A DNA stretch of 63,086 nt, the filler included, from Octopus bimaculoides (taxonomy: Eukaryota): the NCBI RefSeq assembly GCF_001194135.2. It is 8 parts of 8 records of this genome, joined end to end, with 100 filler letters (N's around TTAATTAATTAA, not from the genome) between each part and the next. Parts side by side here need not be neighbours in the genome. Positions count along the whole stretch, not along the records: positions 23,424 to 41,205 come from NC_068991.1; 7 more parts are not named here. One strand, given 5' to 3'. Shown one piece after another: positions 23,424 to 41,205 of the stretch (positions are counted from its first letter, which is position 1; every line of letters begins with the position of its first letter). The translations under genes and the position numbers were made by a program. The notes under the pieces are model-generated. The model did no database searches, was not told where the DNA came from, and worked only from the letters and a program-made list of their open reading frames with translations.

Positions 23424-23530
<107 letters not shown>

Positions 23531-23965
23531 GACAGATGTGTGTGGCTATGTGGTAAGAAGTCTGCTTTCCAACAACATAGTTCTGAGTTCATTCCCACTG
23601 CTTGCACCTCAGTCAAGTGTCTTCTGCTAAAGCCTTGTGAGTGCATTTGTCGGACGGAAACTGAAAGAAGCCTATCGATATATAAATACATATATATTCT
23701 TGTGTGTATACCTTTGTGTCTGTGTTTGTCAGCTCCCCACCCCCACCCCACTACCACCACTACCACCACTTGACAACTGGTGTTGGTGCATTTACATATC
23801 TGTAACTTAGCAGTTCAGCAAAAGAGAATGATAGACTAAGTACGAGGGTTTAAAAAAAAAAAAAAAATAATAATAAATACTAACGTTGATTTGCAAGACT
23901 GAAATTTTTCAAGGTGGTACCCCAGCATGGTTGTAGTCTAATGACTAAAACAAGAATAACAGATA

Positions 23966-24652
23966 CCAAAAAGAAGATGAGAAGAGTTTCTTACAATGCA
24001 AAGAGGAAAGTTGAGTAGCCTTTGTATAGCACAAAGGCCTACTCATCATCATCATCATCGTTTAACGTCCGCTTTCCATGCTAGCATGGGTTGGACGATT
24101 TGACTGAGGACTGGTGAAACCGGATGGCATCACCAGGCCCCAATCTGATTTGGTAGAGTTTCTACAGCTGGATGCCCTTCCTAACACCAACCACTCAGAG
24201 AGTGTAGTGGGTGCTTTTTACGTGCCACCAGCACGAAGGCCAGTCAGGCGGTACTGGCAACGGCAACGGCCACGCTCAAAATGGTGTATTTTATGTGCCA
24301 CCCGCACAAGAGCCAGTCCAGTGGCACTGGCAACGATCTCGCTCGAAAATCCTTACACATGTGACGGGCACAAGTGCCAGAAAGGCGACGCTGGGCACAG
24401 GTGCTATCCCGATTTCGCTTTCTCGATCCTCTTGCGAAGACTTGTTGAGGCAAGTGAAATCGAGCCTACTATGAGAAGATATACACAAATTCATGCAGAT
24501 CTTGTCATTTAGATTGCCCAACGGCAAGATCTACTTAAATTCACATTTCTTAACCATGTTCTTCTGATGATGGGCCTTTGTGCCTGAAATACATAAAGGG
24601 CACCCAACTTTCCTCTTTGCATTGTAAGAAACTCTCCTCGTTTCCTTTTTGG
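23966..24652. repeat. ~85-bp inverted repeat pair (23966-24047 / 24563-24652) enclosing an RTE insertion
   Basis: 30-nt perfect inverted core GAGTTTCTTACAATGCAAAGAGGAAAGTTG. Confidence 0.8.
24043..24465 (-). mobile_element. 5'-truncated RTE 3' end with a short terminal inversion
   Basis: Same tail family as 21001. 24431-24463 is the reverse complement of 21425-21457. Confidence 0.8.
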
Positions 24653-25613
24653 TTTGTTATCCTACTTCTGTATCACAATGCTTCAAGCTAACTATAAAGC
24701 TTCTCTTTCATATATGTGAATATTTATGTATTAGCTATTGATTGATGTACAAATAAAACTGCATTTGATGCCTTTATGTGGTGCTTGGGTGTGGCTTGAA
24801 ACAGATTACCCCCTATTTATATGAATGGTAAGCGAGAAAATAATGCAATTTTTATTTGTATCACTTTGTGATCAATTCTCATATATGACGACCCAAGGAG
24901 AACGAAGTCTGACTGACCAGCTACAACCTTGGCCAGAGGGAGAAAGAAGTTTACTGTCAGCCACTGTGAGACAACATCGCACACATTATAACTAATACGA
25001 GCTCGCATCCTCTTCTCTATAACCCTACCATCTCTCTCTATATATAAACACTACTATGAAAAAGTATACATACAGATACAGGCCGAAATTCTTAACCTTG
25101 TATGCTTTACGTACAAACTGTTATACTATTACACTAACCTACCCGTCGTGGTATGGCAACATATAAAGTAACGGTAAATAAATATTTCTATAAAAATGTT
25201 GATCATCTTCATCGTTCATCTTATAACCAGTACAATTGGTAATTAATACTTATCATTACAATGGGTGACACATCGACTACACAACACAAAAACATCAACC
25301 GTTATATATGTATTATGATAAAACACGAAAATGCAAAGAAAAATTGCATTATTTACTGACTGAATTTCAAATGTATTTCGGGAGAGAAGCTAAGTCAATT
25401 ACAATGACCACTGTACTTAACTAGTATTTACTTTGGTGACCCAGAAAGGTGAAAGGTAAAGCTGACCATGGTAGAATTTGAACTCAGAACATAAAGATGG
25501 ATGAAACGCTGATAAGTAATGAAAACAAGACATTTGTACTCAGAGCTCGAACCGGTTTCAGCCGGGTTGGTAACAAAAGGGTTAAATGATAATGATGATG
25601 ATGATTGTCTTAC

Positions 25614-25675
25614 CAATTTTGAACAATAAAATTCTGTAGTGGCGCGAAATTATAGCCGCCATTGAGGAAGTACTA
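25614..25675 (-). other. Candidate first exon of ASTE1
   Basis: Minus-strand donor G|GTAAGA at 25613-25608 just downstream of the motif cluster. The next clear minus-strand acceptor is 19496. Intervening exons are not excluded and the TSS is approximate. Confidence 0.5.
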
Positions 25676-25732
25676 TTTTGCGCATGCGCAGGGGACTTCA
25701 CCACCGGAAGCCCCTCGAGTTGCGCATGCGTA
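25652..25732. promoter_or_regulatory. Candidate bidirectional promoter
   Basis: GCCGCCATT (YY1-like, 25655-25663), TGCGCATGCGCA (NRF1 palindrome, 25679-25690), CCGGAAG (ETS, 25704-25710), TGCGCATGCGTA (25721-25732). CpG-rich island in AT-rich DNA with donors on both sides (minus 25613, plus GTGAGT 25771). Confidence 0.6.
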
Positions 25733-26138
25733 GTAAAACTCATACTTAAACGGTTAGTTTCACTTTCTCGGTGAGTTGAGCTCAGACCTTCTCCATGACA
25801 ACACCTCACTCCTCCATGAAGCACTTTTCACCATAATGCCTTCGATGGTGATAGCTACTTGCTTCTCTGGCAGGCATCAAGGAAGACCTTAACCTTCCAT
25901 TACCAAACTACAATTTAATCAGCGGCTGCTAAGCTGAATGACAGAAATTGTATAATCAAGTATCATCTTAAATAAAACCTTTTTATTATATTGTAAATTG
26001 TTCTGATGTCTCTTCATTTATAATGCTGTTAAAAGGTGATAGAGAGAGACTAAAGTCTCTATGACAACTATCAAACTTTTACAATCCTTTTTTCTTCTTT
26101 GAAAATTCTCACCACTGATGTTTTTTTTTATATTCCAG

Positions 26139-26169
26139 GATGATTACAACTGTACCTTTGGTAAACTAG
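26139..26169 (+). CDS. Unnamed type-I membrane protein, coding exon A (DDYNCTFGKL), phase 0 to 1
   Basis: T-tract+TATTCCAG acceptor and GTAAGA donor at 26170. End phase matches exon B. Confidence 0.55.
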
Positions 26170-26404
26170 GTAAGATTTAATTCTTTTACTTTTGAATATC
26201 TTGCAGGAGGGATCTTTTATCTTTTAGTTATTGTTGTCATTTACTCTGTGGCCATGCTGGAGCACTGCCTTCAAGTATTTTAGTGAAATGATTTGACTCC
26301 AGTACTTATTTTTTTTTTAAATCTGTACTTATTCTATCAGTCTCTTTTTGGAGAACCACTAAGTTACAGGAATGTAAACATAGCAACACTGGTTGTCAAG
26401 TATT

Positions 26405-26730
26405 GGCAGACTCCGTCTCTTATGACGACAAGGGTTCCAGTTGATCCGGTAAATGGAATAGCTTGCTCGTGACATCAACATACAAGTGGCTGAGCACTCC
26501 ACAGACACGTGTACCCCTTCACATAGTTCTCAGAGAGATTCAGCATGACACAGAGTATGACAAAGCTGGCCCTTTGAAATCCAGGTCCTACTCATTTTTG
26601 CCAGCTGAGTGAACTGGAGCAATGTGAAATAAAGTGTCTCGTCCAAGGACACAACATACCACCAGGAATTGAACTCGTGACCCTATGGTCATGAGCCAAA
26701 TACCCTAACCACTAAGCTACATGCCTTCAC
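26405..26730 (-). mobile_element. tRNA-derived SINE, second head type with the family-A tail
   Basis: Head AGCTTAGTGGTTAGG...GAGTTCAATTCC...TTGTGTCCTTGG. The same head type occurs at 250-585 (minus) and 32985-33190 (plus). Confidence 0.75.
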
Positions 26731-26820
26731 GTTGTCAAGTACGGGGTGGGGATACAGACACAAATATATACTCTCAAAGATATATATATATATATATAAT
26801 GTGTCTACATTACCACCATG

Positions 26821-27212
26821 GAGGCGCAATGGCCCAGTGGTTAGGGCAGCAGACTCGCGGTCATAGGATCGCGGTTTCGATTCCCAGACCGGGCGCTGTG
26901 AGTGTTTATTGAGCGAAAACAGCTAAAGCTCCACGAGGCTCCGGCAGGGGATGGTGGCAAACCCTGCTGTACTCTTTCACCACAACTTTCTCTCACTCTT
27001 TCTTCTTGTTTCTGTTGTGCCTGTAATTCAAAGGGTCAGCCTTGTCATACTCTGTGTCACGCTGAATATCCCCGAGAACTACGTTAAGGGTACACATGTC
27101 TGTGGAGTGCTCAGCCACTTGCACATTAATTTCACGAGCAGGCTGTTCCATTGATCGGATCAACTGGAACCCTCAACATCGTAAGCGACGGAGTGCCAAC
27201 AACAACAACAAC
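26821..27212 (+). mobile_element. tRNA-derived SINE, family A (full length)
   Basis: Head with A box TGGCCCAGTGG and B-box-like GTTTCGATTCC, ending in a (CAA)n tail. Related copies at 6785-7088 (minus), 28876-29195 (minus) and tail-only 8912-9020. Confidence 0.85.
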
Positions 27213-27948
27213 ATTACCACCACCACCACGACCATCACTGTCCCCCCCCACCATTATCCTCATCGTATTGATATTCATCACCATCTTTGTTATTGTTATG
27301 GTCATTGTCATCATCGTCATCATCACTACCATCAAAGGCATGTGTTTTTCCAGCTAGTCCATGAGAATTTGCAAAGATAGTGGGCCTTAATCTTCTCTGT
27401 GTTAAATTCTCCTCTGCTACCACCACCACCACCACCCCTACCACTCCTACCACCACCACCACCACCAGCCACTGCTGCCACTACCATCATCTTCATCCTC
27501 ATCGCCATTTCAGTCAATCACATCATCTTCAACATTATCGTGTTGACTCATTCTCATTATCACCATCATCGTTACCCACCACCACCACCATCATCATCAT
27601 TATCACTTCACTATTGCTACTACTATTGTCATGTCATCATCATTATCATCATAACCAACACCAACATCACCACCATCGACATCATAATCACCATCAACAT
27701 CACCATTATCATAATGAGGCTTATCTAACAAAATTTTAATTTAGTTCTGATTAGATTATTTTTTTAAGAGTTTATACATAAACATACCCAACTTTAAATG
27801 GAACTGTACAAATTTAGCTGGTCTAAACTTCCTGATCAATTTGGAGAAAATATTTAACTCCCACACTTGAAAGGTAAAGAATACATGCTTTCTTCCTCAA
27901 AGAGAGGTGATATTTGGAATCTAAAAATGAATTTTCTCCCTTTTACAG

Positions 27949-28062
27949 AAAACGTCTATGCCCTTGCTGGCCAGTACAATTCCTTTCAAGACGGTCAGTT
28001 CTCAGAGAAGTTGAATGGCAACATGATTTGGAGCCAACTTAAATGGAAAGCACCATCACAGG
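27949..28062 (+). CDS. Membrane protein exon B (ENVYALAGQYNSFQDGQFSEKLNGNMIWSQLKWKAPSQ), phase 1 to 1
   Basis: TTTTCTCCCTTTTACAG acceptor and GTTAGT donor. Only the phase-1 frame is open. Confidence 0.7.
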
Positions 28063-28582
28063 GTTAGTAAAATTTTAACAATATTTTAATTATCTATATT
28101 ATTTACATTTGACGGATATTTGTCTTCATCTTCTTTGTTGTTAACACAACATTTCAGCTGTTATACTCTCCAGCCTTTTTCAGGTGTCCTAGGGTAATTT
28201 TGAACCTGGATTCCTAAGGTATTTTTCAATGTTATTATTATTATTATTCAAGTCACTGCCTGCAATCGAACTTGGAATCTTGGGGTTAGTAGCCTACCTA
28301 TAGTAGCAGTAGTCTTCTCTGAGGCAGGTCCTATGCATGTGAACCTGTCTCCAAGACTCTCTATATAACATGGGAGGGCTCATACCCTCCCCTTCTGTCA
28401 TTAAGTAGATTACAGGAACTTCGGTTGCTATGATTGGATGAATACTGGAGTGGTTTCCCATTGCTTTCTCCTGGCCAATGAAGTGGTCATGAGAAAATTT
28501 TGTGTAATTAATTAACAAATAATTACTTATCAGACTTACTACAAAGTACTTAGATAACAAACTGAATAATAAGTAACTTTAA

Positions 28583-28801
28583 CCCTTCAGCATTTAAACT
28601 GGCCATATTCAGCCAAAATATTTTACTTGCTTTATGTTCAAACCAGCCAGATCTGGCTTCTCACACATACCCTGCAATGTCATTAAAAAAATATGCAATC
28701 ACATCATCAAATCTCGAAGCAATGAGATATTGCAGGATTAATTCAAACCAGTGTGAATAAATAAGCATTACATTTGACAGAGTAATCTGAGTGCTAAAGG
28801 G
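28583..28801. mobile_element. TTAA-flanked MITE (piggyBac-like ends), family 1
   Basis: TTAA|CCCTT...AAAGGG|TTAA. Homologs at 30290-30509, 54558-54745 (truncated) and about 1330-1550 (degenerate). Confidence 0.8.
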
Positions 28802-29514
28802 TTAAATGTAATTTGAATGAATAATTGTTCAACTTCTAATTCCAGGGTTACCTGCCTTACATGACATATGATTTGTTGTTGGCACTCCGTCGCTTACGAC
28901 GTCAAGGGTTCCAGTTGATCCGATCAACGGAACAGCTTGCTCGTGAAATTAACGTGCAAGTGGCTGAGCACTCCACAGACACGTGTACCCTTAACGTAGT
29001 TCTTGGGGATATTCAGCATGACACAGTGTGACAAGGCTGGCCCTTTGAATTACAGGCACAACGGAAACAGGAAGTAATAGTGAGAGAAAGTTGTGGTGAA
29101 AGAGTACAGCAGGGTTCACCACCATCCCCTGCCGGGATGGTGGCGATCCTTTGACCGCGAATCCGCTGCTCTAACCACTGGGCCATTGCGCTTCCACTCA
29201 TGACATATGATATATATGAGATAAATGTATTTTTATCCCCAAAAATGTAGATACACATTGAATGATTATAAAGTTAGTGTTTATTATAACACATTTTCAT
29301 TGTCAGAATTTACTTTTTTATGAATGTCTGTTTTCTAACTAATTACTGCTCTGGTTCAAGCATTGTCAATAATGGTTTCAAATTCTGGCAAATTCAGGGG
29401 ATGGGGTAAGTTGATTACATTGACCCCAATGCTCAACTAGTACTTATTTTATTGACCCTGAAAGGATGAAAGACAATGTTGATCTAAGTGGAATTTGAAC
29501 TCAGAATGTAAAAA

Positions 29515-29822
29515 CTTTTGAGCGAGATCGTTGCCAGTGCCGCTGGACTGGCTCCTGTGCAGGTGGCATGTAAAATACACTATTTTGAGTGTGGCTGTTG
29601 CCAGTACCGTCTGACTGGCCTTTGTGCCGGTGGCACGTAAAAGCACCCACTGCATTCTCAGAATGGTCGGCGTTATGAAGGACATCCAGCTGTAGAAACT
29701 CTGCCAAATCAGATTGGAGCCTGGTGTAGCTATCTGGTTTCACCAGGCCTCAGTCAAATCGTCCAACCCATGCTAGCATGGAAAGCGGACGTTAAACGAT
29801 GATGATAATGATGATGATGAAT
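29515..29822 (+). mobile_element. RTE 3' UTR/tail copy
   Basis: Ends CATGCTAGCATGGAAAGCGGACGTTAAACGATGAT. Confidence 0.85.
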
Positions 29823-30289
29823 GCAAAGATGGAGAAAACGCTTCTAAGCACTTTGTCTGGCATACTAATGGTGGTTTATCAAGCAGTTTAATTTAAATGT
29901 AACTTCATTCCTCCAAACGATCTTTGTTGGAAAGTGCGTCTTCTACACATCTTGCAAAACTCCACTCTTCTGTCCAGATAATCTTCATAGAGAGCATGGA
30001 TATTGAATGTAACTTTTCCAATGACTACACTTCAAAATGTGATGGATGCTTATTTCTGAAATTCCTATCAAATAATTCATTTGTTACAGATTTTCTTGAA
30101 CTCTGGCAATATGTTTCTAGTACCCTTTCTTGCTTTGTGGGGCTTGTTGATGTCTGTGGTCTTGTGAAACATTTTTTATGGGTATTCTGAAGAGTTCCTG
30201 CTGCTTCATATCTATCGCTATTTCAAGTGATGGCAAACCATACTGACGGATTTGCTTGAAACTCCCTCCTAAACTGCCTTAGCATTTAA

Positions 30290-30509
30290 CCCTTTAGTGT
30301 TTAAACCGGCTATATCCGGCCCAAATATTCTCCTCATTTTATGCTCAAACTGGCCAGAACCAGCATCTCACACCTACCCTGCAATGTCGTTCTAAAAATA
30401 AACAATTACATCTTTCAACTCTTGAAGCTACAAGATAATACCAGATTAATTTTTTTAAATGTAAATGAATAAGGATTACTTTTGACATATTAATTTGAAC
30501 ACTAAAGGG
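30290..30509. mobile_element. TTAA-flanked MITE, family 1
   Basis: TTAA|CCCTTTAG...CTAAAGGG|TTAA; body aligns with the 28583 copy. Confidence 0.8.
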
Positions 30510-31261
30510 TTAAACTGCATTTTCAAACTTCTAATTGGACTTTAGGACAAATTTCTTTCGAATACAGTTTAGCCTGGCTCCTTTCACCATTTCTAATGTG
30601 TAAATTCTAGAAAAAATTGAAAATCGAGCAAGTTATCAACTGATGCATTGTGGATACATTTTGTTGCGGACAACTCTTATTATTGTTGTACAGTCATAAA
30701 AAGACAATGTCTAGATTCGTAATCTGTATCTTAATCTTCTCATGGCAAAGAAAAAATTTGAACTTGCGTAAATACATTGAAATATCGTTGTTATTCGGGA
30801 GTGTGTGACTGGCTTTTTTTTTTTTCTTTTCCCTTCTAAATAAGTTTGAATGTAGCTCAAAGAAACAAAAGCAAAAGGTTTATACATTTATGTCCTACTT
30901 GAGATTTCAGAACCACCTACTGAAATTGCATACAATATATTTGTATGAATGCATTTAAGATAACTTCAAACATAACTTTTACCTTTCATTTTCACCTTTT
31001 TGTAAACATACATTTTCCTTTCACTTTTTCACTTTTTTCTAATATTTTTCTTTCTTTTTGCTTTTCATTTTTTCGCTTTTCTTTACTTTTCTTTCCCTTT
31101 CTTTTACTACCCCCACCTTTTAATTGAATTATACATTAATTGAGGTGGAATGACTCATAACCTATTCAACCATAACAGACTCTTTAATGTTTTATCTTTT
31201 TACAAAAAGTTTTTTTAAATCACTCGTTTGAAGGTGTCACTCATGCAAAGACATCCTAACC

Positions 31262-32442
31262 CAGTGGTTCTCAACCAGGTTGCATATAAGACTAAAAATC
31301 CTCAAGGTCGTACTCCAGCATGGTCACGGTCTAGTGACTGAAACAAGTAAAAATAAAAGATAAAACATAAGAAATTGGTTGTACTTCTACAAAGCACAAA
31401 ATATTTTAGCATGGGTAATCATGTATCTCCTTTACAGCAACACACCTATTTCTGTCTCTCTGTCTCGTTCTAACCTTTCACCACTTGGCCCCAAGGTCAC
31501 CTCCTCCAATTCCCCCTCCACTCTCAAAGATTCTTTGTCTTGCAAGTTACCTGAAGACCCTGCCAGTGCTCGGCAAGTAAAAAGTGGCTAGTGTTTGGAA
31601 GGGCATCCAGTTGTAAAAACTATACCAAAACTGACCTCGTCTGTGCTGGTGCCATGTAAAAATCACTCAGTTCCCTCTGTGGGGTCATTGGTGTTAGGAA
31701 GGGCACCTAGCCATAAAAAGCCATGCCAAAACAGACATTGTCTTCGACCTGGCCACCTCCTGTCAAACCATCCATGCCAGCATGGAAAACGGACATTAAA
31801 TGATGATGATGAGGAGGAGGATGATGATCAAGATGATGATGATGAGGAGGATGATCAAGATGATGATGATGATAATGATGATGAATTTCTAATAATCATC
31901 ATCATTATCATCATCATCGTTTAACGTCCGCTTTCCATGCTAGTATGGGTTGGACGATTTGACTGAGGACTGGTGAACCAGATGGCTACACCAGGCTCCA
32001 ATCTGATTTGGCAGAGTTTCTACAGCTGGATGCCCTTCCTAACGCCAACCACTCTGAGAGTGTAGTGGGTGCTGTTACATGCCACCGGCACAGAGGCCAG
32101 TCAGGAGGTACTGGCAACGGCCACGCTCAAAATGGTGTATTTTACGTGCACAGGAGCCAGTCCAGCGGCACTGGCAACGAACTTGCTCGAATGTCTTTTC
32201 ACGTGCCACTGGCACAAGTGCTAGGAAGGCGACGTTGGTAACAATCACACTCAAATGGTGCTATTTACGTGCCACCAGCACGGAAGCCAGACAGCTGGTG
32301 CTCTGGCAACGATCACGCTCGGACGGTGCTCTTAGTGAAAAAAATGCAAGATTTTTTTAAACGTCAAAATGGTTAGGAGAGTCCATCTGAGTAAAATAGG
32401 AATGAAAAGGATCCATAGGTAAAAAATGGTTGGGAAACACTG
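31262..32442. mobile_element. hAT/Charlie-like MITE shell containing nested insertions
   Basis: Ends CAGTGGTTCTCAACC and GGTTGGGAAACACTG. The 8-bp flanks TCCTAACC/TCCTGGAC match at 5 of 8 positions. Confidence 0.6.
31555..32340. mobile_element. Two RTE 3' ends tail-to-tail (31555-31880 plus; 31905-32340 minus)
   Basis: Each carries the CATGGAAA..CGGAC.TTAAA.GATGAT terminus, and the two face each other. Confidence 0.8.
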
Positions 32443-34082
32443 TCCTGGACAGCATTCGGAGTAAGGTTGTCTGCATAAAAAGCAGATGAAAAATGATGAT
32501 CATCATCATGATCATGATCATCATGTTTTCAGTTTCTTTATATCTGACGATCATGAGGTAGAGAGGCATGCCCTCAAGTGGCTATGTAAACTGATCCTTC
32601 ACTGCAGAGCTTTTCTTCTTGCCTGCACTTTGTGGTTTCGAAGTGAGAGTCAGTCTACACCATCCAGTCCTACTCTTTAGACATGAAGATCTGAATACAT
32701 TGGCTCAGCAAACCAAGACAACTGTGGTGAACTGCGAGCTGTACATTTCACAGTTTTACGTTGGAGTGACCTTCCCTTTGGTGAATTGCCTTACTGGACT
32801 GGCAAGCTTCACCTCCCTCCTGGAGTTGCTGGATGGGCGTCAAAAAGAACACCAAATTGCCTGAGGGACTCTATCTTTTGATTTGCTATTTAGGTTGACT
32901 CCCGTAGTCTTTTACTTTCCCAAGTTGCTCACAAGGCAGTGAAGGTTTGTGCTTGGATTTTCTTCCATAGCATGCTGATTAACTCAGAGGAAGTGCATGG
33001 CTTAGTGGTTATTGGTGTTGGACTCATGATTGTAAGATTGTGGTTTCGATTCCTAGACCGGGCGACGCGTTGTGTCCTTGAACAAAACACTTCATTTCAT
33101 GTTGCTCCAGTCCACTCAGCTGGCAAAAATGAGTTATCTTGTGATGGACTGGTCTCCCATCCAGGTGGGGAATATGTCCACATGACTCAAGAAGGTTTCT
33201 TTTTTAATTAACCCAGAGCAGGGACCCTGAAAGATAGCACTTCTCCAGGTCAGAGAAGACCTGGGAACAATGATGGTGAAGAGGTGGGTCCATACTCCTC
33301 AAAATCCTGGAAATCCCAATCAAGGGCCACACTTCTGGATTATGTGTGTGTGTGTGTGTGTATACAGGTGCTGGCATGTCAGTTTGGTTAAGAAATTTGC
33401 TTCCCAACTGATGTGATACCTTGGGCAAGTGTCTTCTATCTTCTACTAAAACTGCTGATAAAACAAAACCTTGAGTTGATTTGATTGACAGAAATTGAAA
33501 GGAGGCCATTCTATGTATGTGTGTATGTGTGTGAGAGAGAGAGAGAGTATGCGTGTGTGTTATTTCTTTACTACCCACAAGGGGCTACACACGGGGGACA
33601 AACAAGGACAGACAAATGGATTAAGTCGATTATATCAACCCCAGTGCGTAACTGGTACTTAATTTATCGACCCCGAAAAGATGAAAGGCTAAGTCGACCA
33701 CGGCGGAATTTGAACTCAGAACGTAGTGGCGGACGAAATACTGTTAAGCATTTCACCCGGCGTGCTAACGTTTCTGCCAGCTCGCTGCCTTTTAAGAGTA
33801 TGCATGTGTGTGTGCATGTATATACATATGTGTGTGTGTGTTATTGTGTATGTGTGTTTGTGTTACCTTGTCTTAACATCGCACAATAGTAGTAAACGAA
33901 TATCACCTTCATACAAGTGATATTGTTCGATTCCAATCTTCTGTGAGAACATGTCTAACCATAAAGAAAGAAAAAAACATCTTGCTTGAAAACAGGTGAG
34001 GTTTGCCAGCAGGAAGAGCACCTCACCGAAGAAAATTTGCCTCATTTTTCCATGCATTCATGGAAAAGTAGACTTTAAAACT

Positions 34083-34119
<37 letters not shown>

Positions 34120-34194
34120 GATAGACTACATAACTTTAAACCATCACTCACCTACTCTTTTTTTTTTCTGTTTTTTTCTTTTCTTTGTCCACAG

Positions 34195-34295
34195 AGAAAG
34201 TCCAAGGCTTCTTAATAATTCTTGTGAACAGCACCTGGAACGAATATTTCGTTTTTAACTTGACTCAAGATGAATTTCTCCAGGATAATTCTGAG
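34195..34295 (+). CDS. Membrane protein exon C (EKVQGFLIILVNSTWNEYFVFNLTQDEFLQDNSE), phase 1 to 0
   Basis: Very strong pyrimidine tract+CACAG acceptor and GTATGT donor. One open frame; NST and NLT sequons. Confidence 0.75.
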
Positions 34296-35028
34296 GTATG
34301 TTTTCTTGTAGAATTCCTTATTTTATCAATATTCTTATGATGTTTTTTAATTAATTAATTTTTTTTNNNNNNNNNNNNNNNNNNNNNNNNNNNNNNNNNN
34401 NNNNNNNNNNNNNNNNNNNNNNNNNNNNNNNNNNNNNNNNNNNNNNNNNNNNNNNNNNNNNNNNNNNNNNNNNNNNNNNNNNNNNNNNNNNNNNNNNNNN
34501 NNNNNNNNNNNNNNNNNNNNNNNNNNNNNNNNNNNNNNNNNNNNNNNNNNNNNNNNNNNNNNNNNNNNNNNNNNNNNNNNNNNNNNNNNNNNNNNNNNNN
34601 NNNNNNNNNNNNNNNNNNNNNNNNNNNNNNNNNNNNNNNNNNNNNNNNNNNNNNNNNNNNNNNNNNNNNNNNNNNNNNNNNNNNNNNNNNNNNNNNNNNN
34701 NNNNNNNNNNNNNNNNNNNNNNNNNNNNNNNNNNNNNNNNNNNNNNNNNNNNNNNNNNNNNNNNNNNNNNNNNNNNNNNNNNNNNNNNNNNNNNNNNNNN
34801 NNNNNNNNNNNNNNNNNNNNNNNNNNNNNNNNNNNNNNNNNNNNNNNNNNNNNNNNNNNNNNNNNNNNNNNNNNNNNNNNNNNNNNNNNNNNNNNNNNNN
34901 NNNNNNNNNNNNNNNNNNNNNNNNNNNNNNNNNNNNNNNNNNNNNNNNNNNNNNNNNNNNNNNNNNNNNNNNNNNNNNNNNNNNNNNNNNNNNNNNNNNN
35001 NNNNNNNNNNNNNNNNNNNNNNNNNNNG

Positions 35029-35107
35029 GAGATAAGAGATTTCTCTGAGCTCACGTTAAGCAAGAAGCTGAAAATTTTTTTGGCCCATGACACTGCATGG
35101 ACTCTAA
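35029..35107 (+). CDS. Membrane protein exon D (EIRDFSELTLSKKLKIFLAHDTAWTL), phase 0 to 1
   Basis: Open frame beginning at the gap edge, so only the G of the acceptor AG is visible. GTAGGG donor. Its phases bridge exons C and E exactly. Confidence 0.5.
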
Positions 35108-35994
35108 GTAGGGAATGCAATTCGAATTTATATCAGAAATGCTAATATTATTGTTATTATCGTTCAAAGAATAGTTAGTGTTAATAATATCAATGTTATT
35201 ATTTTCATTAAGTGGATTTGTATCTAACAACTTAGTGTTATGTGAAGAGATGATTTGTGAAAGGTTTTTGGTGTTTGAAAACCCTATTCTAATTCGGTCT
35301 GAATTGATAATGGAATGGTGTCTTAAATTTTTGGAAAAGTCTTATCTATAGCTTCACGAAACTGGTAAGGAAGGTTGGATTTGATCTGCTTACCATATAG
35401 AATTATCAACGAAACAGCTTTACTAGGACATACCTTATTATTAGGGTAATTATCTTAAAAAAATCTTAGATTTACCCTCATAATGTAAAGTGTCTTAAAG
35501 AACGGTTATCTCCCTTACACTGTAAAACTAAATCAAAATGTGTTGTTGAGGCCAATGACTATTTTCTTGAATAAAATTGCTCTTTAGTATTTCAAGATAT
35601 TTTTATGTAATTTTGGTAAATATTTGTTAAAATAAGATGTCAGTGTAATTTTCATTTTTGCATAATTTAGACAATTTATTTGCCACATCCTGTACCCTTA
35701 TGAAGAGTCGGTCCCAAGGCTATTTATATATATATATATATATTTCCTGCACCTTGATTGAACATCAGCAAAATTTGTCCGTGACTCTTACANNNNNNNN
35801 NNNNNNNNNNNNNNNNNNNNNNNNNNNNNNNNNNNNNNNNNNNNNNNNNNNNNNNNNNNNNNNNNNNNNNNNNNNNNNNNNNNNNNNNNNNNATGTAAAT
35901 AATTCCTCATCTCTTAAATATAGAACTGTACCTTATTTTGTATTATTCATGTATTTTCTTGCTTTATTTTTCTTCTTGTCCTCCAATGTTTTAG

Positions 35995-36111
35995 CATTCA
36001 CAAATAATGTGAATTTACCAAAAAACAAGGAGGCTTCTTATGATTGGATGATTATTTTGGGAGGAGTCCTTCTCATTATCCTGATCCTTGTTTTACTGGT
36101 TGTCATAAGAT
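35995..36111 (+). CDS. Membrane protein exon E with TM helix (TFTNNVNLPKNKEASYDWMIILGGVLLIILILVLLVVIR), phase 1 to 1
   Basis: Pyrimidine tract+TTTTAG acceptor and canonical GTAAGT donor. Encodes a 21-aa hydrophobic helix followed by Arg. Confidence 0.8.
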
Positions 36112-36292
36112 GTAAGTAAAAACCCATTTTATTGATACAGTTTGCTACAAAATCCTGATAATATATCTTTTATCTTCATCTTTTAATCATTTCACCCATT
36201 GAACTGTAAATCGCTGGCCTTGTACCAACATTTGAAATCAGTATTTAGCACTCATGTTATTTAAATATCTTCAAAACCATGCCAAGGATACA

Positions 36293-37257
36293 CAGGGTGT
36301 CCAGAAAGTTTGGGTACATGGAGTAAATAAAATCATAACATAAACAATTAAATATAAGAAATAATAATTTCTTAAAGTATGTGTTAATCCCCATGTGGGT
36401 ACATGGAGTAAATAAAATCATAACATAAACAATTAAATATAAGAAATAATTTCTTAAAGTATGTGTTAATCCCCGTGTAGGTACATGGAGTAAATAAAAT
36501 CATAACATAAACAATTAAATATAAGAAATAACAGTTTCTTAAAGTATGTGTTAATCCCCATGTGGGTACATGGAGTAAATAAAATCATAACATAAACAAT
36601 TAAATANNNNNNNNNNNNNNNNNNNNNNNNNNNNNNNNNNNNNNNNNNNNNNNNNNNNNNNNNNNNNNNNNNNNNNNNNNNNNNNNNNNNNNNNNNNNNN
36701 NNNNNNNNNNNNNNNNNNNNNNNNNNNNNNNNNNNNNNNNNNNNNNNNNNNNNNNNNNNNNNNNNNNNNNNNNNNNNNNNNNNNNNNNNNNNNNNNNNNN
36801 NNNNNNNNNNNNNNNNNNNNNNNNNNNNNNNNNNNNNNNNNNNNNNNNNNNNNNNNNNNNNNNNNNNNNNNNNNNNNNNNNNNNNNNNNNNNNNNNNNNN
36901 NNNNNNNNNNNNNNNNNNNNNNNNNNNNNNNNNNNNNNNNNNNNNNNNNNNNNNNNNNNNNNNNNNNNNNNNNNNNNNNNNNNNNNNNNNNNNNNNNNNN
37001 NNNNNNNNNNNNNNNNNNNNNNNNNNNNNNNNNNNNNNNNNNNNNNNNNNNNNNNNNNNNNNNNNNNNNNNNNNNNNNNNNNNNNNNNNNNNNNNNNNNN
37101 NNNNNNNNNNNNNNNNNNNNNNNNNNNNNNNNNNNNNNNNNNNNNNNNTGGGTACATGGAGTAAATAAAATCATAACATAAACAATTAAATATAAGAAAT
37201 AATAATTTCTTAAAGTATGTGTTAAACCCCATGTACCCAGATTTTGTGGACACCCTG
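36293..37257. repeat. Tc1/mariner-like MITE with an internal 82-85 bp tandem array
   Basis: TIRs CAGGGTGTCCAGAAAGTTTGGGTACATGG / CCATGTACCCAGATTTTGTGGACACCCTG|TA. Monomers start at 36312, 36397, 36479, 36564 and 37150, with a gap in between. Confidence 0.85.
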
Positions 37258-37534
37258 TAGAATAAAATATTTCCTCAAATTATGAAAATGTAACACTGGT
37301 GGTGCAGATGGTAGTTGTGTGAAGTTTGTGATGAACCACCAGGGATATATGTGGTGGTTAGCATTTAAAAAACAGTGGATTAGCAGAATACAGAGCAGTG
37401 GGTAGAACATCTCATTGTATTTATTCTAACTCTCTGCATCCCAAGTTATATTTCCACCATGGTCAGCATTGCCTTTCACCTTCAGTGGTTGATGAAAAAA
37501 AGGTACCAATACAAGCTGGTACTTACTTACTTAA

Positions 37535-38020
37535 CCCTTTTGTTACCATATTTCTGTTGAGATACTCTTTTACTCATTTGTGTTTCTTTCAATTAATTTT
37601 AAATATAACAAAGAATTTAGTAAAATAACTTACTTATCATTAAGCTAGTGTTAGGAACATAAATTGTGACTAAGGTTTGGTGGAAAATTTTAATTCAGAA
37701 CTAATGAAAACAGGACATTTGTTCTACAGAGCCAGAGGCAGTTTCAGCTGGGTTGATATCAAAAAGGTTAAGAATTGTTTCTCTATTACATATTTTAACC
37801 CTTTCGTCACCTTATTTCTGTTGAGATGTTCTGTGTTTCTTTCAATTAATTTTAAATATAACAAAGAATTTAGTAAAACAACTTAGTTATCATTAAGCTA
37901 GTGTTAGGAACATAAATTGTGACTAAGGTTTGGTGGAAAACTTCAATTCAGAATTTTTGAAAATAAAACATTTGTATTACAGAGCCAGAGGTAGTTTCAG
38001 GAAGGTTGGTATCAAAAGGG
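37535..38020. mobile_element. Two adjacent TTAA-flanked MITEs, family 2 (37535-37767, 37799-38020)
   Basis: Each starts TTAA|CCCTTT and ends AAAAGG(G)|T(T/C)AA. The bodies are highly similar to each other. Confidence 0.8.
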
Positions 38021-38957
38021 TCAACAGTGGACTTTTCTCCACTGTTTTCAACTTTAGACTGTCTCATCTGCTTCTCACTTGTTGGATCCCTGTTTTTCTC
38101 TTGCAGCTTACTTTCAGATTTTGCTACACAACATCATATGTTTCTTTGAGAAAAGCCCTTCCTCTCCCAAGCCTTGTTGGTTTTGAATTGTCATCAGTAC
38201 TTCAGTAACTTGGCTTTTTTCTTTTCAGGTAAGAGTGTTGGCTCTATGCAAACTAGTTTTTACCTCTGGGAAGAGGTGGTCCATATTAGCCTGGCTTCTA
38301 TCCTTTGATCTGTCTAGCATAAGAGTCCATACCAAGAGCTTGCACTCCACTGACATAGCTCTCAAAGTCATTGAAGCAGACAAGCCACCACATGGCAACA
38401 AGGACTGGACCTTGTGAGGGAATCCAGGGTGATTAGATTGGTGGAAATGTTAGGAGGTCATGTAAGACCCTGTGTAGGATCTGTTCTGGCTCTTTAGATT
38501 TTGACAACAACACCTGCAATAGCATTGCTGCGAAGGTATATCACACCTGAGTTGGCAACCTTTCCTTTGAATAAAAATTTATTGCATGGGAAACTTCCAG
38601 TGTTCCTCAGTAAATCATGTCCAGAGCTGCATACACAAGTACAGATTCATAATCAACTCCTTGACAGAAATATCGTAATTGACTACATATAATCATGTTT
38701 GTATAATTGATCTTACAACACCCAGTGCATTGTGCTCCTGGTTGAGAACAAATTCCAATGAGCTTCATAGTTGAATGGTAAGATTGAAAGTCGAATGAAA
38801 TCCAATTCTGAAAACCACATGCTCCAATGATTTGTAAATATATAAATTTTCATGAAAGCCCTCATCTATGTTGAGATGGGGAAAAAAATCAGATGCATAA
38901 CTGAACTTCTTACCAAAGTTTCATGACTGACTTAACAAAACTTTCTTTTTATTCCAG

Positions 38958-39232
38958 GTCATGTTTCTAGTAAAAAACAAAATTGTGATTATGATCCAGT
39001 GAATAAGACTCTTGACCAGGAAAACTGTACTAAATCTAATACTGCTGAAGAACCCCCTGAAGATGATGGCTTCAGCAATTGCATGGCTAAGATAAATACT
39101 AATAATAAAACTTCACTTGCAAAACTACCTGAAGAAGAAAACATTAGTTATTACTTGGCTAAGATCAATGCCAGTGACCATGATGAAAAATCTAATATTT
39201 TTGGCAACAGTTATCAGAATATAGATTTGTAA
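38958..39232 (+). CDS. Membrane protein terminal exon F, cytoplasmic tail (CHVSSKKQNCDYDPV...NSYQNIDL*)
   Basis: CTTTCTTTTTATTCCAG acceptor in phase 1 matches exon E. Open for 91 codons to TAA; AATAAA near 39465. Confidence 0.7.
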
Positions 39233-39490
39233 AGCTGATTTCTCTTCCACATAGCCACATTCTTGATTAACACACAAGCAGCAGCTTATTTGCTGCATTA
39301 GTAAATCCACATTCAGTATGATTCAATGATCATTAGATCACTATCAAGCAGTGTTCCCTCTATTTCACTACAACCATCATCACCATCACCATTACCAACA
39401 CCACTGTCACTACAATCATAGTCACTTATGTTCTTCTCCAAGCTTGCTAACAATATAATGCATCAATAAAAACTCAAATCATTACATATA

Positions 39491-40727
39491 CAGGGGTTGG
39501 ACAAAATAATGGAAACACTTTAAGATTTCAAACAAATTTATTTTAATATCGGGTAGGACCGCCTTTGGCAGTAATTACAGTTTGAATTCTACAAGGTATG
39601 GACTCGTATAAAGTTTGAATTGTTTCCAAAGGAATTTTTGTCCATTCTTCAGCTAAAACAGTCTCCAGTTCTTGTAGTGATGATGGTGGAGGATATCGAC
39701 TCCTTACTTGTTTTTCTAAAATGCACCATAAATGTTCAATAATATTGAGATCTAGGGACTGTGGTGGCCAGATAAGATGTTCAACTTCACTAGAATGTTC
39801 CTCGTGCCATTCAGTTACAACTTTAGCTGTGTGAATTGCTGCATTGTCATCCTGAAAGATTGCGTTTCCCTCCAGAAACAGTTCCACAACCATAGAATGA
39901 ATTTGATCAGATAAAATGCTTAAATAGTCTTGACTATTAATTCTGCCATGAAAGGAAACCATTGGGCTGGTGGATTTCCAAGGTAAAGCCCCCCAGATCA
40001 TCACAGATCCTCCTCTATGTTTAACAGTTGGAAGATGGCAGCCTGGGTCAAATACTTCTTTTGGCTGTCTCCACATGTATACTCGGTCGATGGTCAGAAA
40101 TAAGGTAAAAGATGACTCGTCCGAGAAAATAACATTCTTCCACTGCCCTAGGGACTAATCCTGTAGGTTTTTACTCCACTCTAAATGCTTTGCAACGTTT
40201 GTTTTTGAAAGCAGTGGTTTTCTCATTGTAGCTCTCCTGTGAAATTCGGCTTTGTGCAGCTCCTGGCAAACAGTTTTTGTGGAAACTGGGTGCTCAAGGT
40301 GGTCGTTAAGTTCTGCAGTAATTTTGGGAGATGTACTTCTGTGATCCTTTCTAACAATTTGCGTAAGAGTTTGACAGTCCCTATCTGAAAGTTTTGGTTC
40401 TCTTCTGGAGTTTTGTTTTGACGAGGAGGTTTTTTCCTCTTTCTTAAAAGCTGTCATTACTTCTTGATACACCAAACATTTCGTTACACTAGCACCTGCC
40501 ATACGAGCACCAACAATTTGACCTCTTTGAAAGTCCAATAGATCTGTCGTTTTAATGAATTTTAATTACCTTTTTCTGATGATATCTGAAAAGAAAGATC
40601 AATTTTAGCAAAACACTAATAATTAATCAAAAAACATAAAAATAGACAAGCTTTCAACGGTTTTATAGATGTTTCAAAATTATGATGCTATGATGCTAGG
40701 CGTTTCCATTATTTTGTCCAACCCCTG
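39491..40727 (-). mobile_element. Tc1-like (DD34E) DNA transposon, full length 1237 bp, transposase disrupted
   Basis: 26-bp TIRs CAGGGGTTGGACAAAATAATGGAAAC with TA on both sides. Transposase pieces DFQRGQIVGARMAGASV, FQDDNAAIH, WPPQSLDLNIIEHLW. Apparent start codon is ACG and frameshifts split the ORF. Confidence 0.95.
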
Positions 40728-40897
40728 TATCTTTGAGCACAGATCTCTAACCATCACCAAGACCCTATAACAAAACACTTCATCATATCCTTCTTCCTCA
40801 GAACCTTATCCCTGTTTGGGTATTATGTATCTGCCTTAATCTCTCCATCCTCAGCTCAGTTATATTAAATCCTCAGTGTAAGATGGCTTAAAAACAC

Positions 40898-41205
40898 TGT
40901 AGTAACGCCTTGTCTCGTGCGCATGCGTAGTCATCAATATCCAAGTTTGGCGCCCTGATTCTTTCTCTTTCTCGGTCGGCCGGCCATGAGCATGGACGGG
41001 TCAAGCTGTCTCTCCAGCATTCCAGCTCTGGGGACAGCTCATTCCAACATTCCGGCGTCTCAGCAACCAGTTTAAGGCTGCCTATTTCCTCCATAAATAA
41101 ATATTGCTGTGTTGATAGTTCAGAGTTCTGCGTTCCGTTATTATTTAGAATTTAATATAGGAAAGCGGGTGTACACCTAATGGTGCATAACCACTTTCCT
41201 ATAAC
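40898..41205 (+). mobile_element. LTR (copy 3), runs into a gap
   Basis: Same TGTAGTAACGCC start, GCGCATGCGTAGT, AATAAATATTG and CACTTTCCTATAAC end as copy 1. Confidence 0.75.

What the first reader, a model, noticed from the sequence alone, without database searches (positions are those of the whole stretch)
26139..39232. Hidden six-exon gene for a single-pass receptor-like protein head-to-head with ASTE1
Six exons with GT-AG sites splice with intron phases 1,1,0,1,1 into one stop-free 717-nt frame (238 aa plus stop). The ectodomain is N-glycosylation-rich with an FN3-like LKWKAP...VQGFLI signature, followed by a 21-aa TM helix and a 91-aa tail. I do not recognise it as a known gene, and it is not NEK11, the vertebrate ASTE1 neighbour. 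It may be a lineage-specific cytokine- or immune-receptor-like protein.
Basis: partly seen in the sequence, partly recalled or inferred. Interest (0 to 1): 0.8.

Follow-up and report, generated by a model that had tools for sequence, protein, structure and literature searches.

The report
Octopus orphan membrane-protein gene, split by gaps

Summary
The piece is Octopus bimaculoides chromosome CM046611.1:66996052-67013833. Five of its six exons are real: they match, with identical boundaries and phases, the RefSeq gene LOC115217258 of O. sinensis (295-349 aa, three isoforms) and two O. vulgaris proteins. The fourth exon (35029-35107) is not supported. It abuts gap 1, its acceptor would be N+G, and it lies in a 765-bp island with no counterpart in O. 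sinensis. At this point O. sinensis has 7.5 kb carrying a 79-nt Cys-rich exon and three tandem 69-nt Thr-rich stalk exons. These are lost in gaps 1 and 2. The signal-peptide exon lies about 41 kb upstream, outside the piece, so 26139 is exon 2 and not a gene start facing ASTE1. RefSeq annotates the O. bimaculoides locus as two fragments, LOC106878081 and LOC106876703. The product is a type I glycoprotein: signal peptide, an ectodomain of about 120 aa predicted to be all-beta, a mucin-like stalk, a TM helix, and a 90-aa acidic tail with conserved CDYDxV and C-terminal SYQN[LI]DL. Pfam, PDB, a 1.84-billion-protein HMMER scan and Foldseek found no FN3 or cytokine-receptor signal. It is an Octopus-restricted, fast-evolving orphan.

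The parts
26139..26169 (+). Coding exon 2 (31 nt, DDYNCTFGKL, phase 0 in and 1 out).
   Evidence: ttccag|GATGAT...AACTAG|gtaaga. 100% match to P0003/XP_014782664.2 and 10/10 aa to O. sinensis LOC115217258 exon 2 at L001 56669-56699, with the same AG/GT sites.
27949..28062 (+). Coding exon 3 (114 nt, ENVYALAGQYNSFQDGQFSEKLNGNMIWSQLKWKAPSQ, phase 1/1).
   Evidence: tblastn 100% to P0003 and 89% to O. sinensis. Orthologous exon at L001 58614-58727 has the same length and splice sites.
34195..34295 (+). Coding exon 4 (101 nt, EKVQGFLIILVNSTWNEYFVFNLTQDEFLQDNSE, phase 1 in and 0 out).
   Evidence: tblastn hits to P0003 and P0001. Orthologous exon at L001 59804-59904 has the same length.
34349..35940 (.). 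Break in collinearity: gap 1 (34367-35027), an unanchored 765-bp island (35028-35792) and gap 2 (35793-35892). The true exon 5 (79 nt, Cys-rich) and one to three 69-nt Thr-rich stalk exons are missing here.
   Evidence: O. sinensis L001 59960-67470 (7.5 kb, exons at 63726-63804, ~65151, ~65985, ~66768) matches the piece only through dispersed repeats. The island's only match to L001 is one 65-bp minus-strand hit outside the gene, at L001 71279-71343.
35029..35107 (+). Judged spurious.
   Evidence: The acceptor would be N35027+G35028. No tblastn match to any orthologue. Local alignment to the true O. sinensis exon 5 scores 8, against a shuffled mean of 8.4. RefSeq chose a different exon in the same island, which is equally unsupported.
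35995..36111 (+). Coding exon for the membrane-proximal segment plus TM helix (117 nt, (T)FTNNVNLPKNKEASYDWMIILGGVLLIILILVLLVVIR(C), phase 1/1).
   Evidence: ttttag|CATTCA...TAAGAT|gtaagt. 100% to XP_014780851. Orthologous exon at L001 67525-67668 is 27 nt longer, an in-frame difference. Kyte-Doolittle peak above 2.6.
38958..39232 (+). Last coding exon (275 nt, 90-aa cytoplasmic tail, stop at 39230-39232).
   Evidence: attccag|GTCATG. 100% to XP_014780851 and 80% to O. sinensis, with two in-frame 3-nt indels. Orthologous exon at L001 69442-69716.

Best explanation
Window 26139-39232 holds exons 2-4, the TM exon and the last exon of one real protein-coding gene of Octopus bimaculoides. It is the orthologue of O. 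sinensis LOC115217258 and O. vulgaris CAI9729687.1. Exon 1 (signal peptide) lies about 41 kb upstream of 26139, outside the piece. One 79-nt Cys-containing exon and at least one 69-nt Thr-rich stalk exon are lost in assembly gaps 1 and 2. Because of those gaps, RefSeq splits the locus into two fragment genes, LOC106878081 and LOC106876703. Shown: the encoded protein is a type I membrane protein. It has a cleavable-looking signal peptide and an ectodomain of about 120 aa with 3-4 N-glycosylation sequons and five Cys downstream of the predicted signal peptide. The ectodomain is predicted all-beta at low confidence. A stalk follows, built from 1-3 tandemly duplicated, alternatively used exons (ADNNRKKPVITSTTTEINE-YIV). 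Then come one TM helix, a basic stop-transfer stretch, and an acidic tail of about 90 aa that was modelled at very low confidence (pLDDT 31-40). Inferred: it sits at the cell surface as a receptor or adhesion-type glycoprotein. The Thr-rich repeats form an O-glycosylated spacer of variable length that holds the small beta domain away from the membrane. The two tyrosine motifs conserved between species are juxtamembrane CDYD[SP]V and C-terminal SYQN[LI]DL. The latter fits both pYxN (Grb2-SH2 type) and YxxPhi (AP-2 type). These motifs would mediate phosphotyrosine docking and/or endocytic sorting. The gene is detectable only in the genus Octopus and evolves nearly as fast as its introns, while keeping its reading frame. 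The confidence given applies to the gene's identity, structure and protein architecture; the functional inference alone would rate about 0.3.
For: Orthologues: 85-100% identical proteins in three Octopus species. Exon boundaries, lengths and phases are identical in O. sinensis genomic DNA, with all AG/GT sites conserved. The piece is exactly L002 48365-66146 of CM046611.1, with both RefSeq fragment models over it. Collinearity breaks exactly at gaps 1 and 2. Frame retention: no stop in 211 codons (P about 0.10 under 55 random substitutions). All 18 splice-site nucleotides are kept (P about 0.22). Three of three coding indels are multiples of 3, against 6 of 17 in aligned non-coding DNA (P about 0.04). 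Joint probability is about 1e-3. Ectodomain dN/dS is 0.38. Both AlphaFold models give beta strands over the ectodomain and a long TM helix. Three RefSeq isoforms in O. sinensis differ in stalk-exon number.
Against: No transcript data could be examined here, so expression rests on others' gene models. Overall dN/dS is 0.75, not significantly below 1 (p = 0.23), and is 1.1 for TM plus tail. Exon nucleotide divergence (8.7%) equals non-coding divergence (8.1%). No domain or homologue gives a functional anchor. The structure models have pLDDT 45-50. The tail motifs are short and could arise by chance. They do not meet strict ITIM or ITAM patterns.
Confidence: 0.85

Rival explanations
1. One reading: the ectodomain is an FN3 domain, and the protein is a lineage-specific cytokine- or immune-receptor-like molecule.
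For: The stretch SQLKWKAPSQEKV[QK]GFLIIL resembles the B-C strand pattern of FN3 domains (l.W..P....i.GY.i.y; my knowledge of the family). AlphaFold predicts 8-9 beta strands across residues about 45-145. The domain size of about 100-120 aa fits a beta sandwich.
Against: Pfam fn3 was not reported even at E<=10 for the O. bimaculoides or O. sinensis ectodomain. phmmer against all PDB chains gave no hit at E<=10. Foldseek against PDB gave no FN3/Ig hit: best E was 0.03 and 0.26, with TM below 0.25. There is no WSxWS motif, no second FN3 domain, no proline Box1 in the tail, and no ITIM or ITAM.
Confidence: 0.15
2. The frame is a gene-prediction artefact or a decaying or young gene under no protein-level constraint. 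The exons are conserved only because the species are close.
For: Exons are no more conserved than introns: 8.7% against 8.1% mismatches. Overall dN/dS is 0.75 (p = 0.23), and TM plus tail is 1.1. No homologue was found outside Octopus among 1.84 billion representative proteins. There is no Pfam domain.
Against: The joint probability of keeping an open frame, all splice sites and only 3n indels under neutrality is about 1e-3. Ectodomain dN/dS is 0.38 (p = 0.06). The signal peptide plus TM plus stop-transfer architecture is coherent. The gene was modelled independently in three species, with alternative isoforms in RefSeq.
Confidence: 0.08
3. The current O. bimaculoides RefSeq annotation is right: two separate small genes, LOC106878081 (secreted 143-aa protein) and LOC106876703 (145-aa membrane protein).
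For: Both models exist in RefSeq on assembly GCA_001194135.2.
Against: In O. sinensis and O. vulgaris the two halves are one reading frame with matching phases. The 3' exon of LOC106878081 (CLKERLSPLH...) lies in the unanchored island and has no orthologue. The start of LOC106876703 (MYFLALFFFLSSNVLA) is read from the polypyrimidine tract and acceptor of the TM exon. The split coincides with the gaps.
Confidence: 0.03

Closest known systems
Octopus sinensis LOC115217258 (XP_036363055.1, XP_029642759.1, XP_036363056.1) and O. vulgaris CAI9729687.1 / CAI9729686.1, uncharacterized proteins
   Same: Orthologues with 80-90% amino-acid identity over every shared exon. Exon boundaries and intron phases are identical and the flanking introns are collinear.
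   Different: The O. bimaculoides copy is incompletely assembled: exon 5 and the stalk exons are missing. Its TM exon is 27 nt shorter (no QPANTVYLP), and its tail has two one-codon indels.
O. bimaculoides RefSeq loci LOC106878081 (XP_014782664.2) and LOC106876703 (XP_014780851.2)
   Same: Same DNA.
   Different: They are annotated as two genes with artefactual ends. The evidence here says they are one gene interrupted by gaps.
Small FN3-containing type I membrane proteins (for example the FNDC4/FNDC5 type) and class I cytokine receptors
   Same: Overall layout: signal peptide, one small beta-rich ectodomain, TM, short tail. There is a W..P....GF.I pattern reminiscent of FN3 strands B-C (sequence; my knowledge of FN3).
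   Different: No detectable sequence or fold match to FN3. No WSxWS, no cytokine-receptor Cys pattern shown, no Box1. A Thr-rich repeat stalk is present.
TMEM154 family (Pfam PF15102), small Ser/Thr-rich type I membrane proteins of vertebrates
   Same: Weak hit over stalk, TM and juxtamembrane region (E 8.5e-4, 19.6 bits). The architecture is similar: a short glycosylated ectodomain and a single TM.
   Different: The score is below the curated cut-off of 30.3 bits. The match covers compositionally biased and hydrophobic segments only, and the beta-rich N-terminal domain has no counterpart.

Membership tests
Orthologous group of O. sinensis LOC115217258 | High sequence identity over the shared coding exons | tested here: met
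   77-91% aa identity per exon by tblastn, E down to 1e-38. phmmer E 2.9e-77.
Orthologous group of O. sinensis LOC115217258 | Same exon-intron structure and conserved synteny of flanking non-coding DNA | tested here: met
   Same exon lengths (31, 114, 101, 275 nt), same phases, AG/GT sites conserved. Introns are collinear at 80-93% identity.
Orthologous group of O. sinensis LOC115217258 | Complete set of exons (signal peptide, Cys-rich exon 5, stalk repeats) | tested here: inconclusive
   Exon 1 is found in the chromosome record 41 kb upstream. Exon 5 and the stalk exons are absent from assembled sequence and fall in gaps 1 and 2.
Fibronectin type III domain (Pfam PF00041) | Significant match to the fn3 profile | tested here: not met
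   fn3 is not among the hits at E<=1 or E<=10. HMMER filters drop most matches above E of about 0.1.
Fibronectin type III domain (Pfam PF00041) | Seven-strand beta-sandwich fold matching solved FN3 structures | tested here: inconclusive
   AlphaFold models are all-beta but have pLDDT 45-50. Foldseek against PDB gave no significant hit and no FN3 among the top 50.
Class I cytokine receptors | WSxWS motif and cytokine-receptor homology module (two FN3 domains) | tested here: not met
   No WSxWS in any of the orthologue sequences, and only one small domain of about 120 aa.
Class I cytokine receptors | Proline-rich Box1 motif in the membrane-proximal tail | tested here: not met
   The tail after the TM reads KCRVSRKKQNCDYDSVNKT..., and the only PP is in EEPPEDD, about 40 aa further in.
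ITIM/ITAM-bearing immune receptors | (S/I/V/L)xYxx(I/V/L), or two YxxL/I motifs spaced 6-8 residues apart | tested here: not met
   The only conserved tail motifs are CDYD[SP]V (position -2 is C) and NSYQN[LI] (position -2 is N), 74 residues apart.
TMEM154 (PF15102) | Score above the Pfam gathering threshold | tested here: not met
   15.3-19.6 bits against a cut-off of 30.3.

The most novel reading that the evidence does not exclude
The gene is a true taxonomically restricted (Octopus- or octopod-only) surface receptor that arose recently and is evolving under relaxed or diversifying selection. Its extracellular reach would be tuned by copy number and alternative use of tandemly duplicated mucin-like stalk exons. 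Such a gene could be a candidate self/non-self, gamete or chemotactile recognition molecule specific to octopuses.
Probability: 0.25. Interest if true: 0.4.

Novelty: already known. Interest (0 to 1): 0.2.

Why it matters
The practical value is modest. The result shows that two RefSeq loci of O. bimaculoides (LOC106878081 and LOC106876703) are halves of one gene broken by assembly gaps, and it gives the exon map needed to merge them once the gaps are closed. Biologically, the gene is one more example of the octopus-restricted, fast-evolving membrane proteins with no recognisable domain that cephalopod genomes contain in number (my knowledge: Albertin et al. 2015, Nature 524:220). Its variable Thr-rich stalk, built by exon duplication, is a neat but not unusual feature. 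Methodologically, it shows that a stop-free GT-AG chain drawn next to an assembly gap can contain a false exon of exactly the right length and phase.

Tried and rejected
- Enumerating the two middle exons from splice sites and frame alone gave 35 stop-free solutions, none containing the true TM exon. This showed the chain test is weak.
- Pfam scans of the model, the orthologues and minus-strand frames upstream gave only sub-threshold hits driven by the TM or composition (Protocadherin, TMEM154, EphA2_TM and others). There was no XPG/ASTE1 domain.
- The look-up of encoding contigs failed for P0001, P0002 and P0003 because only the longest isoform is indexed. It worked for P0004 and P0006.
- The HMMER scan of 1.84 billion representatives gave only the query's own cluster plus P0005. 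P0005 is a bacterial Big_15 repeat protein whose three repeats resemble the tail motif ISYYLAKIN..DH.E..F.NSYQN (E 3.9e-4). I reject this as chance or convergent, because it would align a folded bacterial Ig domain with a tail that AlphaFold modelled only at very low confidence.
- Both AlphaFold runs, full length and ectodomain only, were low-confidence because only two divergent lineages were available. The Foldseek results are therefore not informative.
There is no similarity above shuffled controls.
- I searched the piece for exon 1 by protein and by DNA. It is absent.
- A literature search for the locus names found nothing.
- ARAGORN found no tRNA in the piece.


Full report
**Where the sequence comes from.** The piece (window 23424-41205, 38% G+C, three N runs) is identical to L002 48365-66146. 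That places it at Octopus bimaculoides assembly GCA_001194135.2, chromosome CM046611.1:66996052-67013833, between two further assembly gaps.

**Checking the observation.** I located the two quoted motifs on the + strand, read the splice sites and rebuilt the chain:

| Exon | Coordinates | Length (nt) |
|---|---|---|
| 1 | 26139-26169 | 31 |
| 2 | 27949-28062 | 114 |
| 3 | 34195-34295 | 101 |
| 4 | 35029-35107 | 79 |
| 5 | 35995-36111 | 117 |
| 6 | 38958-39232 | 275 |

- Five exons have canonical AG and GT sites.
- The fourth begins one base after gap 1, so its 'AG' would be N35027+G35028 and cannot be read.
- The chain has no start codon. The ATG at 26140 is out of frame and runs into TAG at 26167.
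- A stop-free GT-AG chain is weak evidence in this AT-rich DNA. With only length and phase fixed, 35 other pairs of 'exons' between 34296 and 38957 also gave open chains.

**Is it a gene?** Yes.
- A protein search with the secure exons returned O. sinensis LOC115217258 isoform X3 (295 aa, E 2.9e-77). It also returned two O. bimaculoides fragments that are 100% identical to the window.
- Cluster look-up added O. sinensis isoforms X1 and X2, two O. vulgaris proteins, and the current O. bimaculoides RefSeq entries XP_014782664.2 (LOC106878081, 143 aa) and XP_014780851.2 (LOC106876703, 145 aa).
- The O. sinensis genomic locus (L001) has exons of the same length (31, 114, 101 and 275 nt) and the same phases, with all AG/GT sites conserved. 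Its TM exon is 144 nt against 117 nt here.

**The gaps.**
- The piece is collinear with L001 in four blocks: 25521-28282, 34083-34348, 35941-36161 and 38420-39733.
- Collinearity stops 18 nt before gap 1 and resumes 48 nt after gap 2.
- Between those points O. sinensis has 7.5 kb. It carries a 79-nt exon (TIFSFTCEKDFTSKFYMCYSGKQCFL, phase 0>1) and three tandem 69-nt exons (ADNNRKKPVITSTTTEINE[DN]YIV, phase 1>1).
- None of this is present in the piece.
- The 765-bp island between the two gaps has no orthologous match.
That is why the chain closes.
- Without an intervening 3n+1 exon the frame breaks, because phase 0 would meet phase 1.
- Gap 3 lies in the last intron, inside an 85-bp tandem array, and is irrelevant to the frame.

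**The 5' end and ASTE1.**
- The signal-peptide exon (MVCSISHLSLLLLLIPLASSCRSLKISPPSCINK) is not in the piece.
- In the chromosome record it lies 40,977 bp upstream of 26139, counting gaps. In O. sinensis intron 1 is 46.5 kb.
- So 26139 is exon 2 and 23424-26138 is intron 1.
- No XPG/ASTE1-type domain is encoded on the minus strand there.
- No gene is called within 10 kb upstream of exon 1 in either species.

**Selection.** I compared O. bimaculoides with O. sinensis over 210 aligned codons.

| Region | dN | dS | dN/dS | Fisher p (dN/dS < 1) |
|---|---|---|---|---|
| All | 0.087 | 0.117 | 0.75 | 0.23 |
| Ectodomain exons | 0.057 | 0.15 | 0.38 | 0.06 |
| TM plus tail | 0.108 | 0.098 | 1.1 | 0.66 |

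- Non-coding aligned DNA differs by 8.1% and coding DNA by 8.7%. The protein therefore evolves almost as fast as the introns.
- The frame is nevertheless kept. The probability of no stop after 55 random substitutions is about 0.10.
- All 18 splice-site nucleotides are unchanged (P about 0.22).
- All three coding indels (27, 3 and 3 nt) are multiples of three, against 6 of 17 in non-coding DNA (P about 0.04).
- Jointly this is about 1e-3.
- I conclude the gene is functional but weakly constrained.

**What the protein is.**
- Sequence features (sequences):
  - an N-terminal hydrophobic signal sequence;
  - an ectodomain of about 120 aa with sequons NCT, N[NS]T and NLT (plus NNS in O. sinensis), and Cys at positions 31, 39, 123, 134 and 140;
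  - a stalk of one to three Thr-rich repeats, numbering 3 in isoform X1, 1 in X2 and X3, and 2 in O. vulgaris;
  - a strongly hydrophobic 21-23-aa helix;
  - a basic stop-transfer stretch, KCRVSRKK in O. sinensis and RCHVSSKK in O. bimaculoides;
  - an acidic, Asn-rich tail of about 90 aa.
- The conserved tail tyrosines are CDYD[SP]V and the C-terminal SYQN[LI]DL.
- Pfam gives nothing above threshold. fn3 is absent, and the weak TMEM154, Protocadherin and EphA2_TM hits lie on the stalk and TM.
- phmmer against all PDB chains found nothing at E<=10.
- A full HMMER scan of 1.84 billion cluster representatives found only the protein's own cluster and a bacterial Big_15 repeat protein at E 3.9e-4. 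I regard that match as chance.
- AlphaFold models (pLDDT 45 and 50) show beta strands across the ectodomain and one long helix. Foldseek against PDB gave no significant match and no FN3/Ig hits.
- The FN3 idea is therefore neither confirmed nor excluded at the fold level. At the sequence level it fails.
- The defining features of cytokine receptors (WSxWS, Box1) and the ITIM/ITAM motifs are absent.

**Most likely mechanism (inference).** The protein is probably a cell-surface glycoprotein. Its small beta-rich head would be held away from the membrane by an O-glycosylated stalk whose length varies through exon duplication and alternative splicing. The tail would couple to phosphotyrosine adaptors (pYxN) and/or to AP-2-dependent endocytosis (YxxPhi). 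Restriction to Octopus and near-neutral evolution of the tail fit a young, lineage-specific recognition or adhesion molecule. No experiment or homologue anchors this.

**Verdict.**
- The gene is not 'hidden'. It is annotated in full in O. sinensis and O. vulgaris, and as two gap-split fragments here.
- One exon is an artefact beside a gap, and the model lacks exon 1 and at least two gap-borne exons.
- The ASTE1 and FN3/cytokine-receptor parts are unsupported.
- Novelty: already known as an uncharacterized locus. Interest is low.

Noticed in passing
window 39488-40730 (minus strand): A 1243-bp Tc1/mariner element with perfect 29-nt terminal inverted repeats (39488-39516 and 40702-40730). Its transposase frames hit HTH_Tnp_Tc3_2 and DDE_3 and are separated by a stop at 40155-40157. 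The first ~250 bp are also present downstream of the orthologous gene in O. sinensis (L001 to 70178), so the insertion may predate the species split.
   Followed up: partly
window 35949-35994 and 35491-35574: The two RefSeq fragment models have artefactual ends. XP_014780851.2 starts at an ATG inside the polypyrimidine tract upstream of the TM exon (MYFLALFFFLSSNVLA). XP_014782664.2 ends in an exon (CLKERLSPLHCKTKSKCVVEANDYFLE) inside the unanchored 765-bp island.
   Followed up: yes
window 36311-36606 and 37149-37277: An 85-bp tandem repeat (3.5 copies, 94% matches) runs into gap 3 and resumes on its far side, which probably explains the gap. O. sinensis lacks this array in the orthologous intron.
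   Followed up: partly
window 37579-37771 and 37832-38024: Two 90% identical direct copies spaced 253 bp apart. They match L001 56341-56568, in intron 1 of the O. sinensis gene, at 84%, so this is a dispersed repeat. Several of the spurious alternative 'exons' fall in these copies.
   Followed up: no
window 24043-24400, 29507-29820, 31896-32250; and 26410-26590, 26941-27205, 28873-29135: Two families of SINE-like dispersed repeats in both orientations, 80-95% identical, fill much of introns 1-3 and recur many times in the O. sinensis locus. ARAGORN finds no intact tRNA in them.
   Followed up: no
window 34083-34119; L001 58961-59730: An (ATG)12 microsatellite just upstream of exon 34195-34295 is expanded to about 750 bp in O. 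sinensis. The intron between exons 28062 and 34195 is 6.1 kb here against 1.1 kb in O. sinensis, owing to repeat insertions.
   Followed up: no
L001 65151-65219, 65985-66053, 66768-66836: The three Thr-rich stalk exons of O. sinensis sit in near-identical tandem genomic units of ~780-835 bp with identical splice-site contexts. Isoforms and species differ in how many they use: 3 in X1, 1 in X2 and X3, 2 in O. vulgaris.
   Followed up: partly
P0005 versus tail (window 39130-39229): A bacterial protein made of three Big_15 Ig-like repeats matches the tail segment ISYYLAKIN..DHDEKS.F.NSYQN once per repeat, at 33-42% identity and a library-wide E of 3.9e-4. This is probably chance but remains unexplained.
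   Followed up: partly
L001 78800-79716 (minus strand): The downstream neighbour of the O. sinensis gene is a 1508-aa protein with a Myb_DNA-bind_7 domain. No such gene is called in the gap-rich 6.3 kb of O. bimaculoides sequence held downstream of the gene.
   Followed up: no
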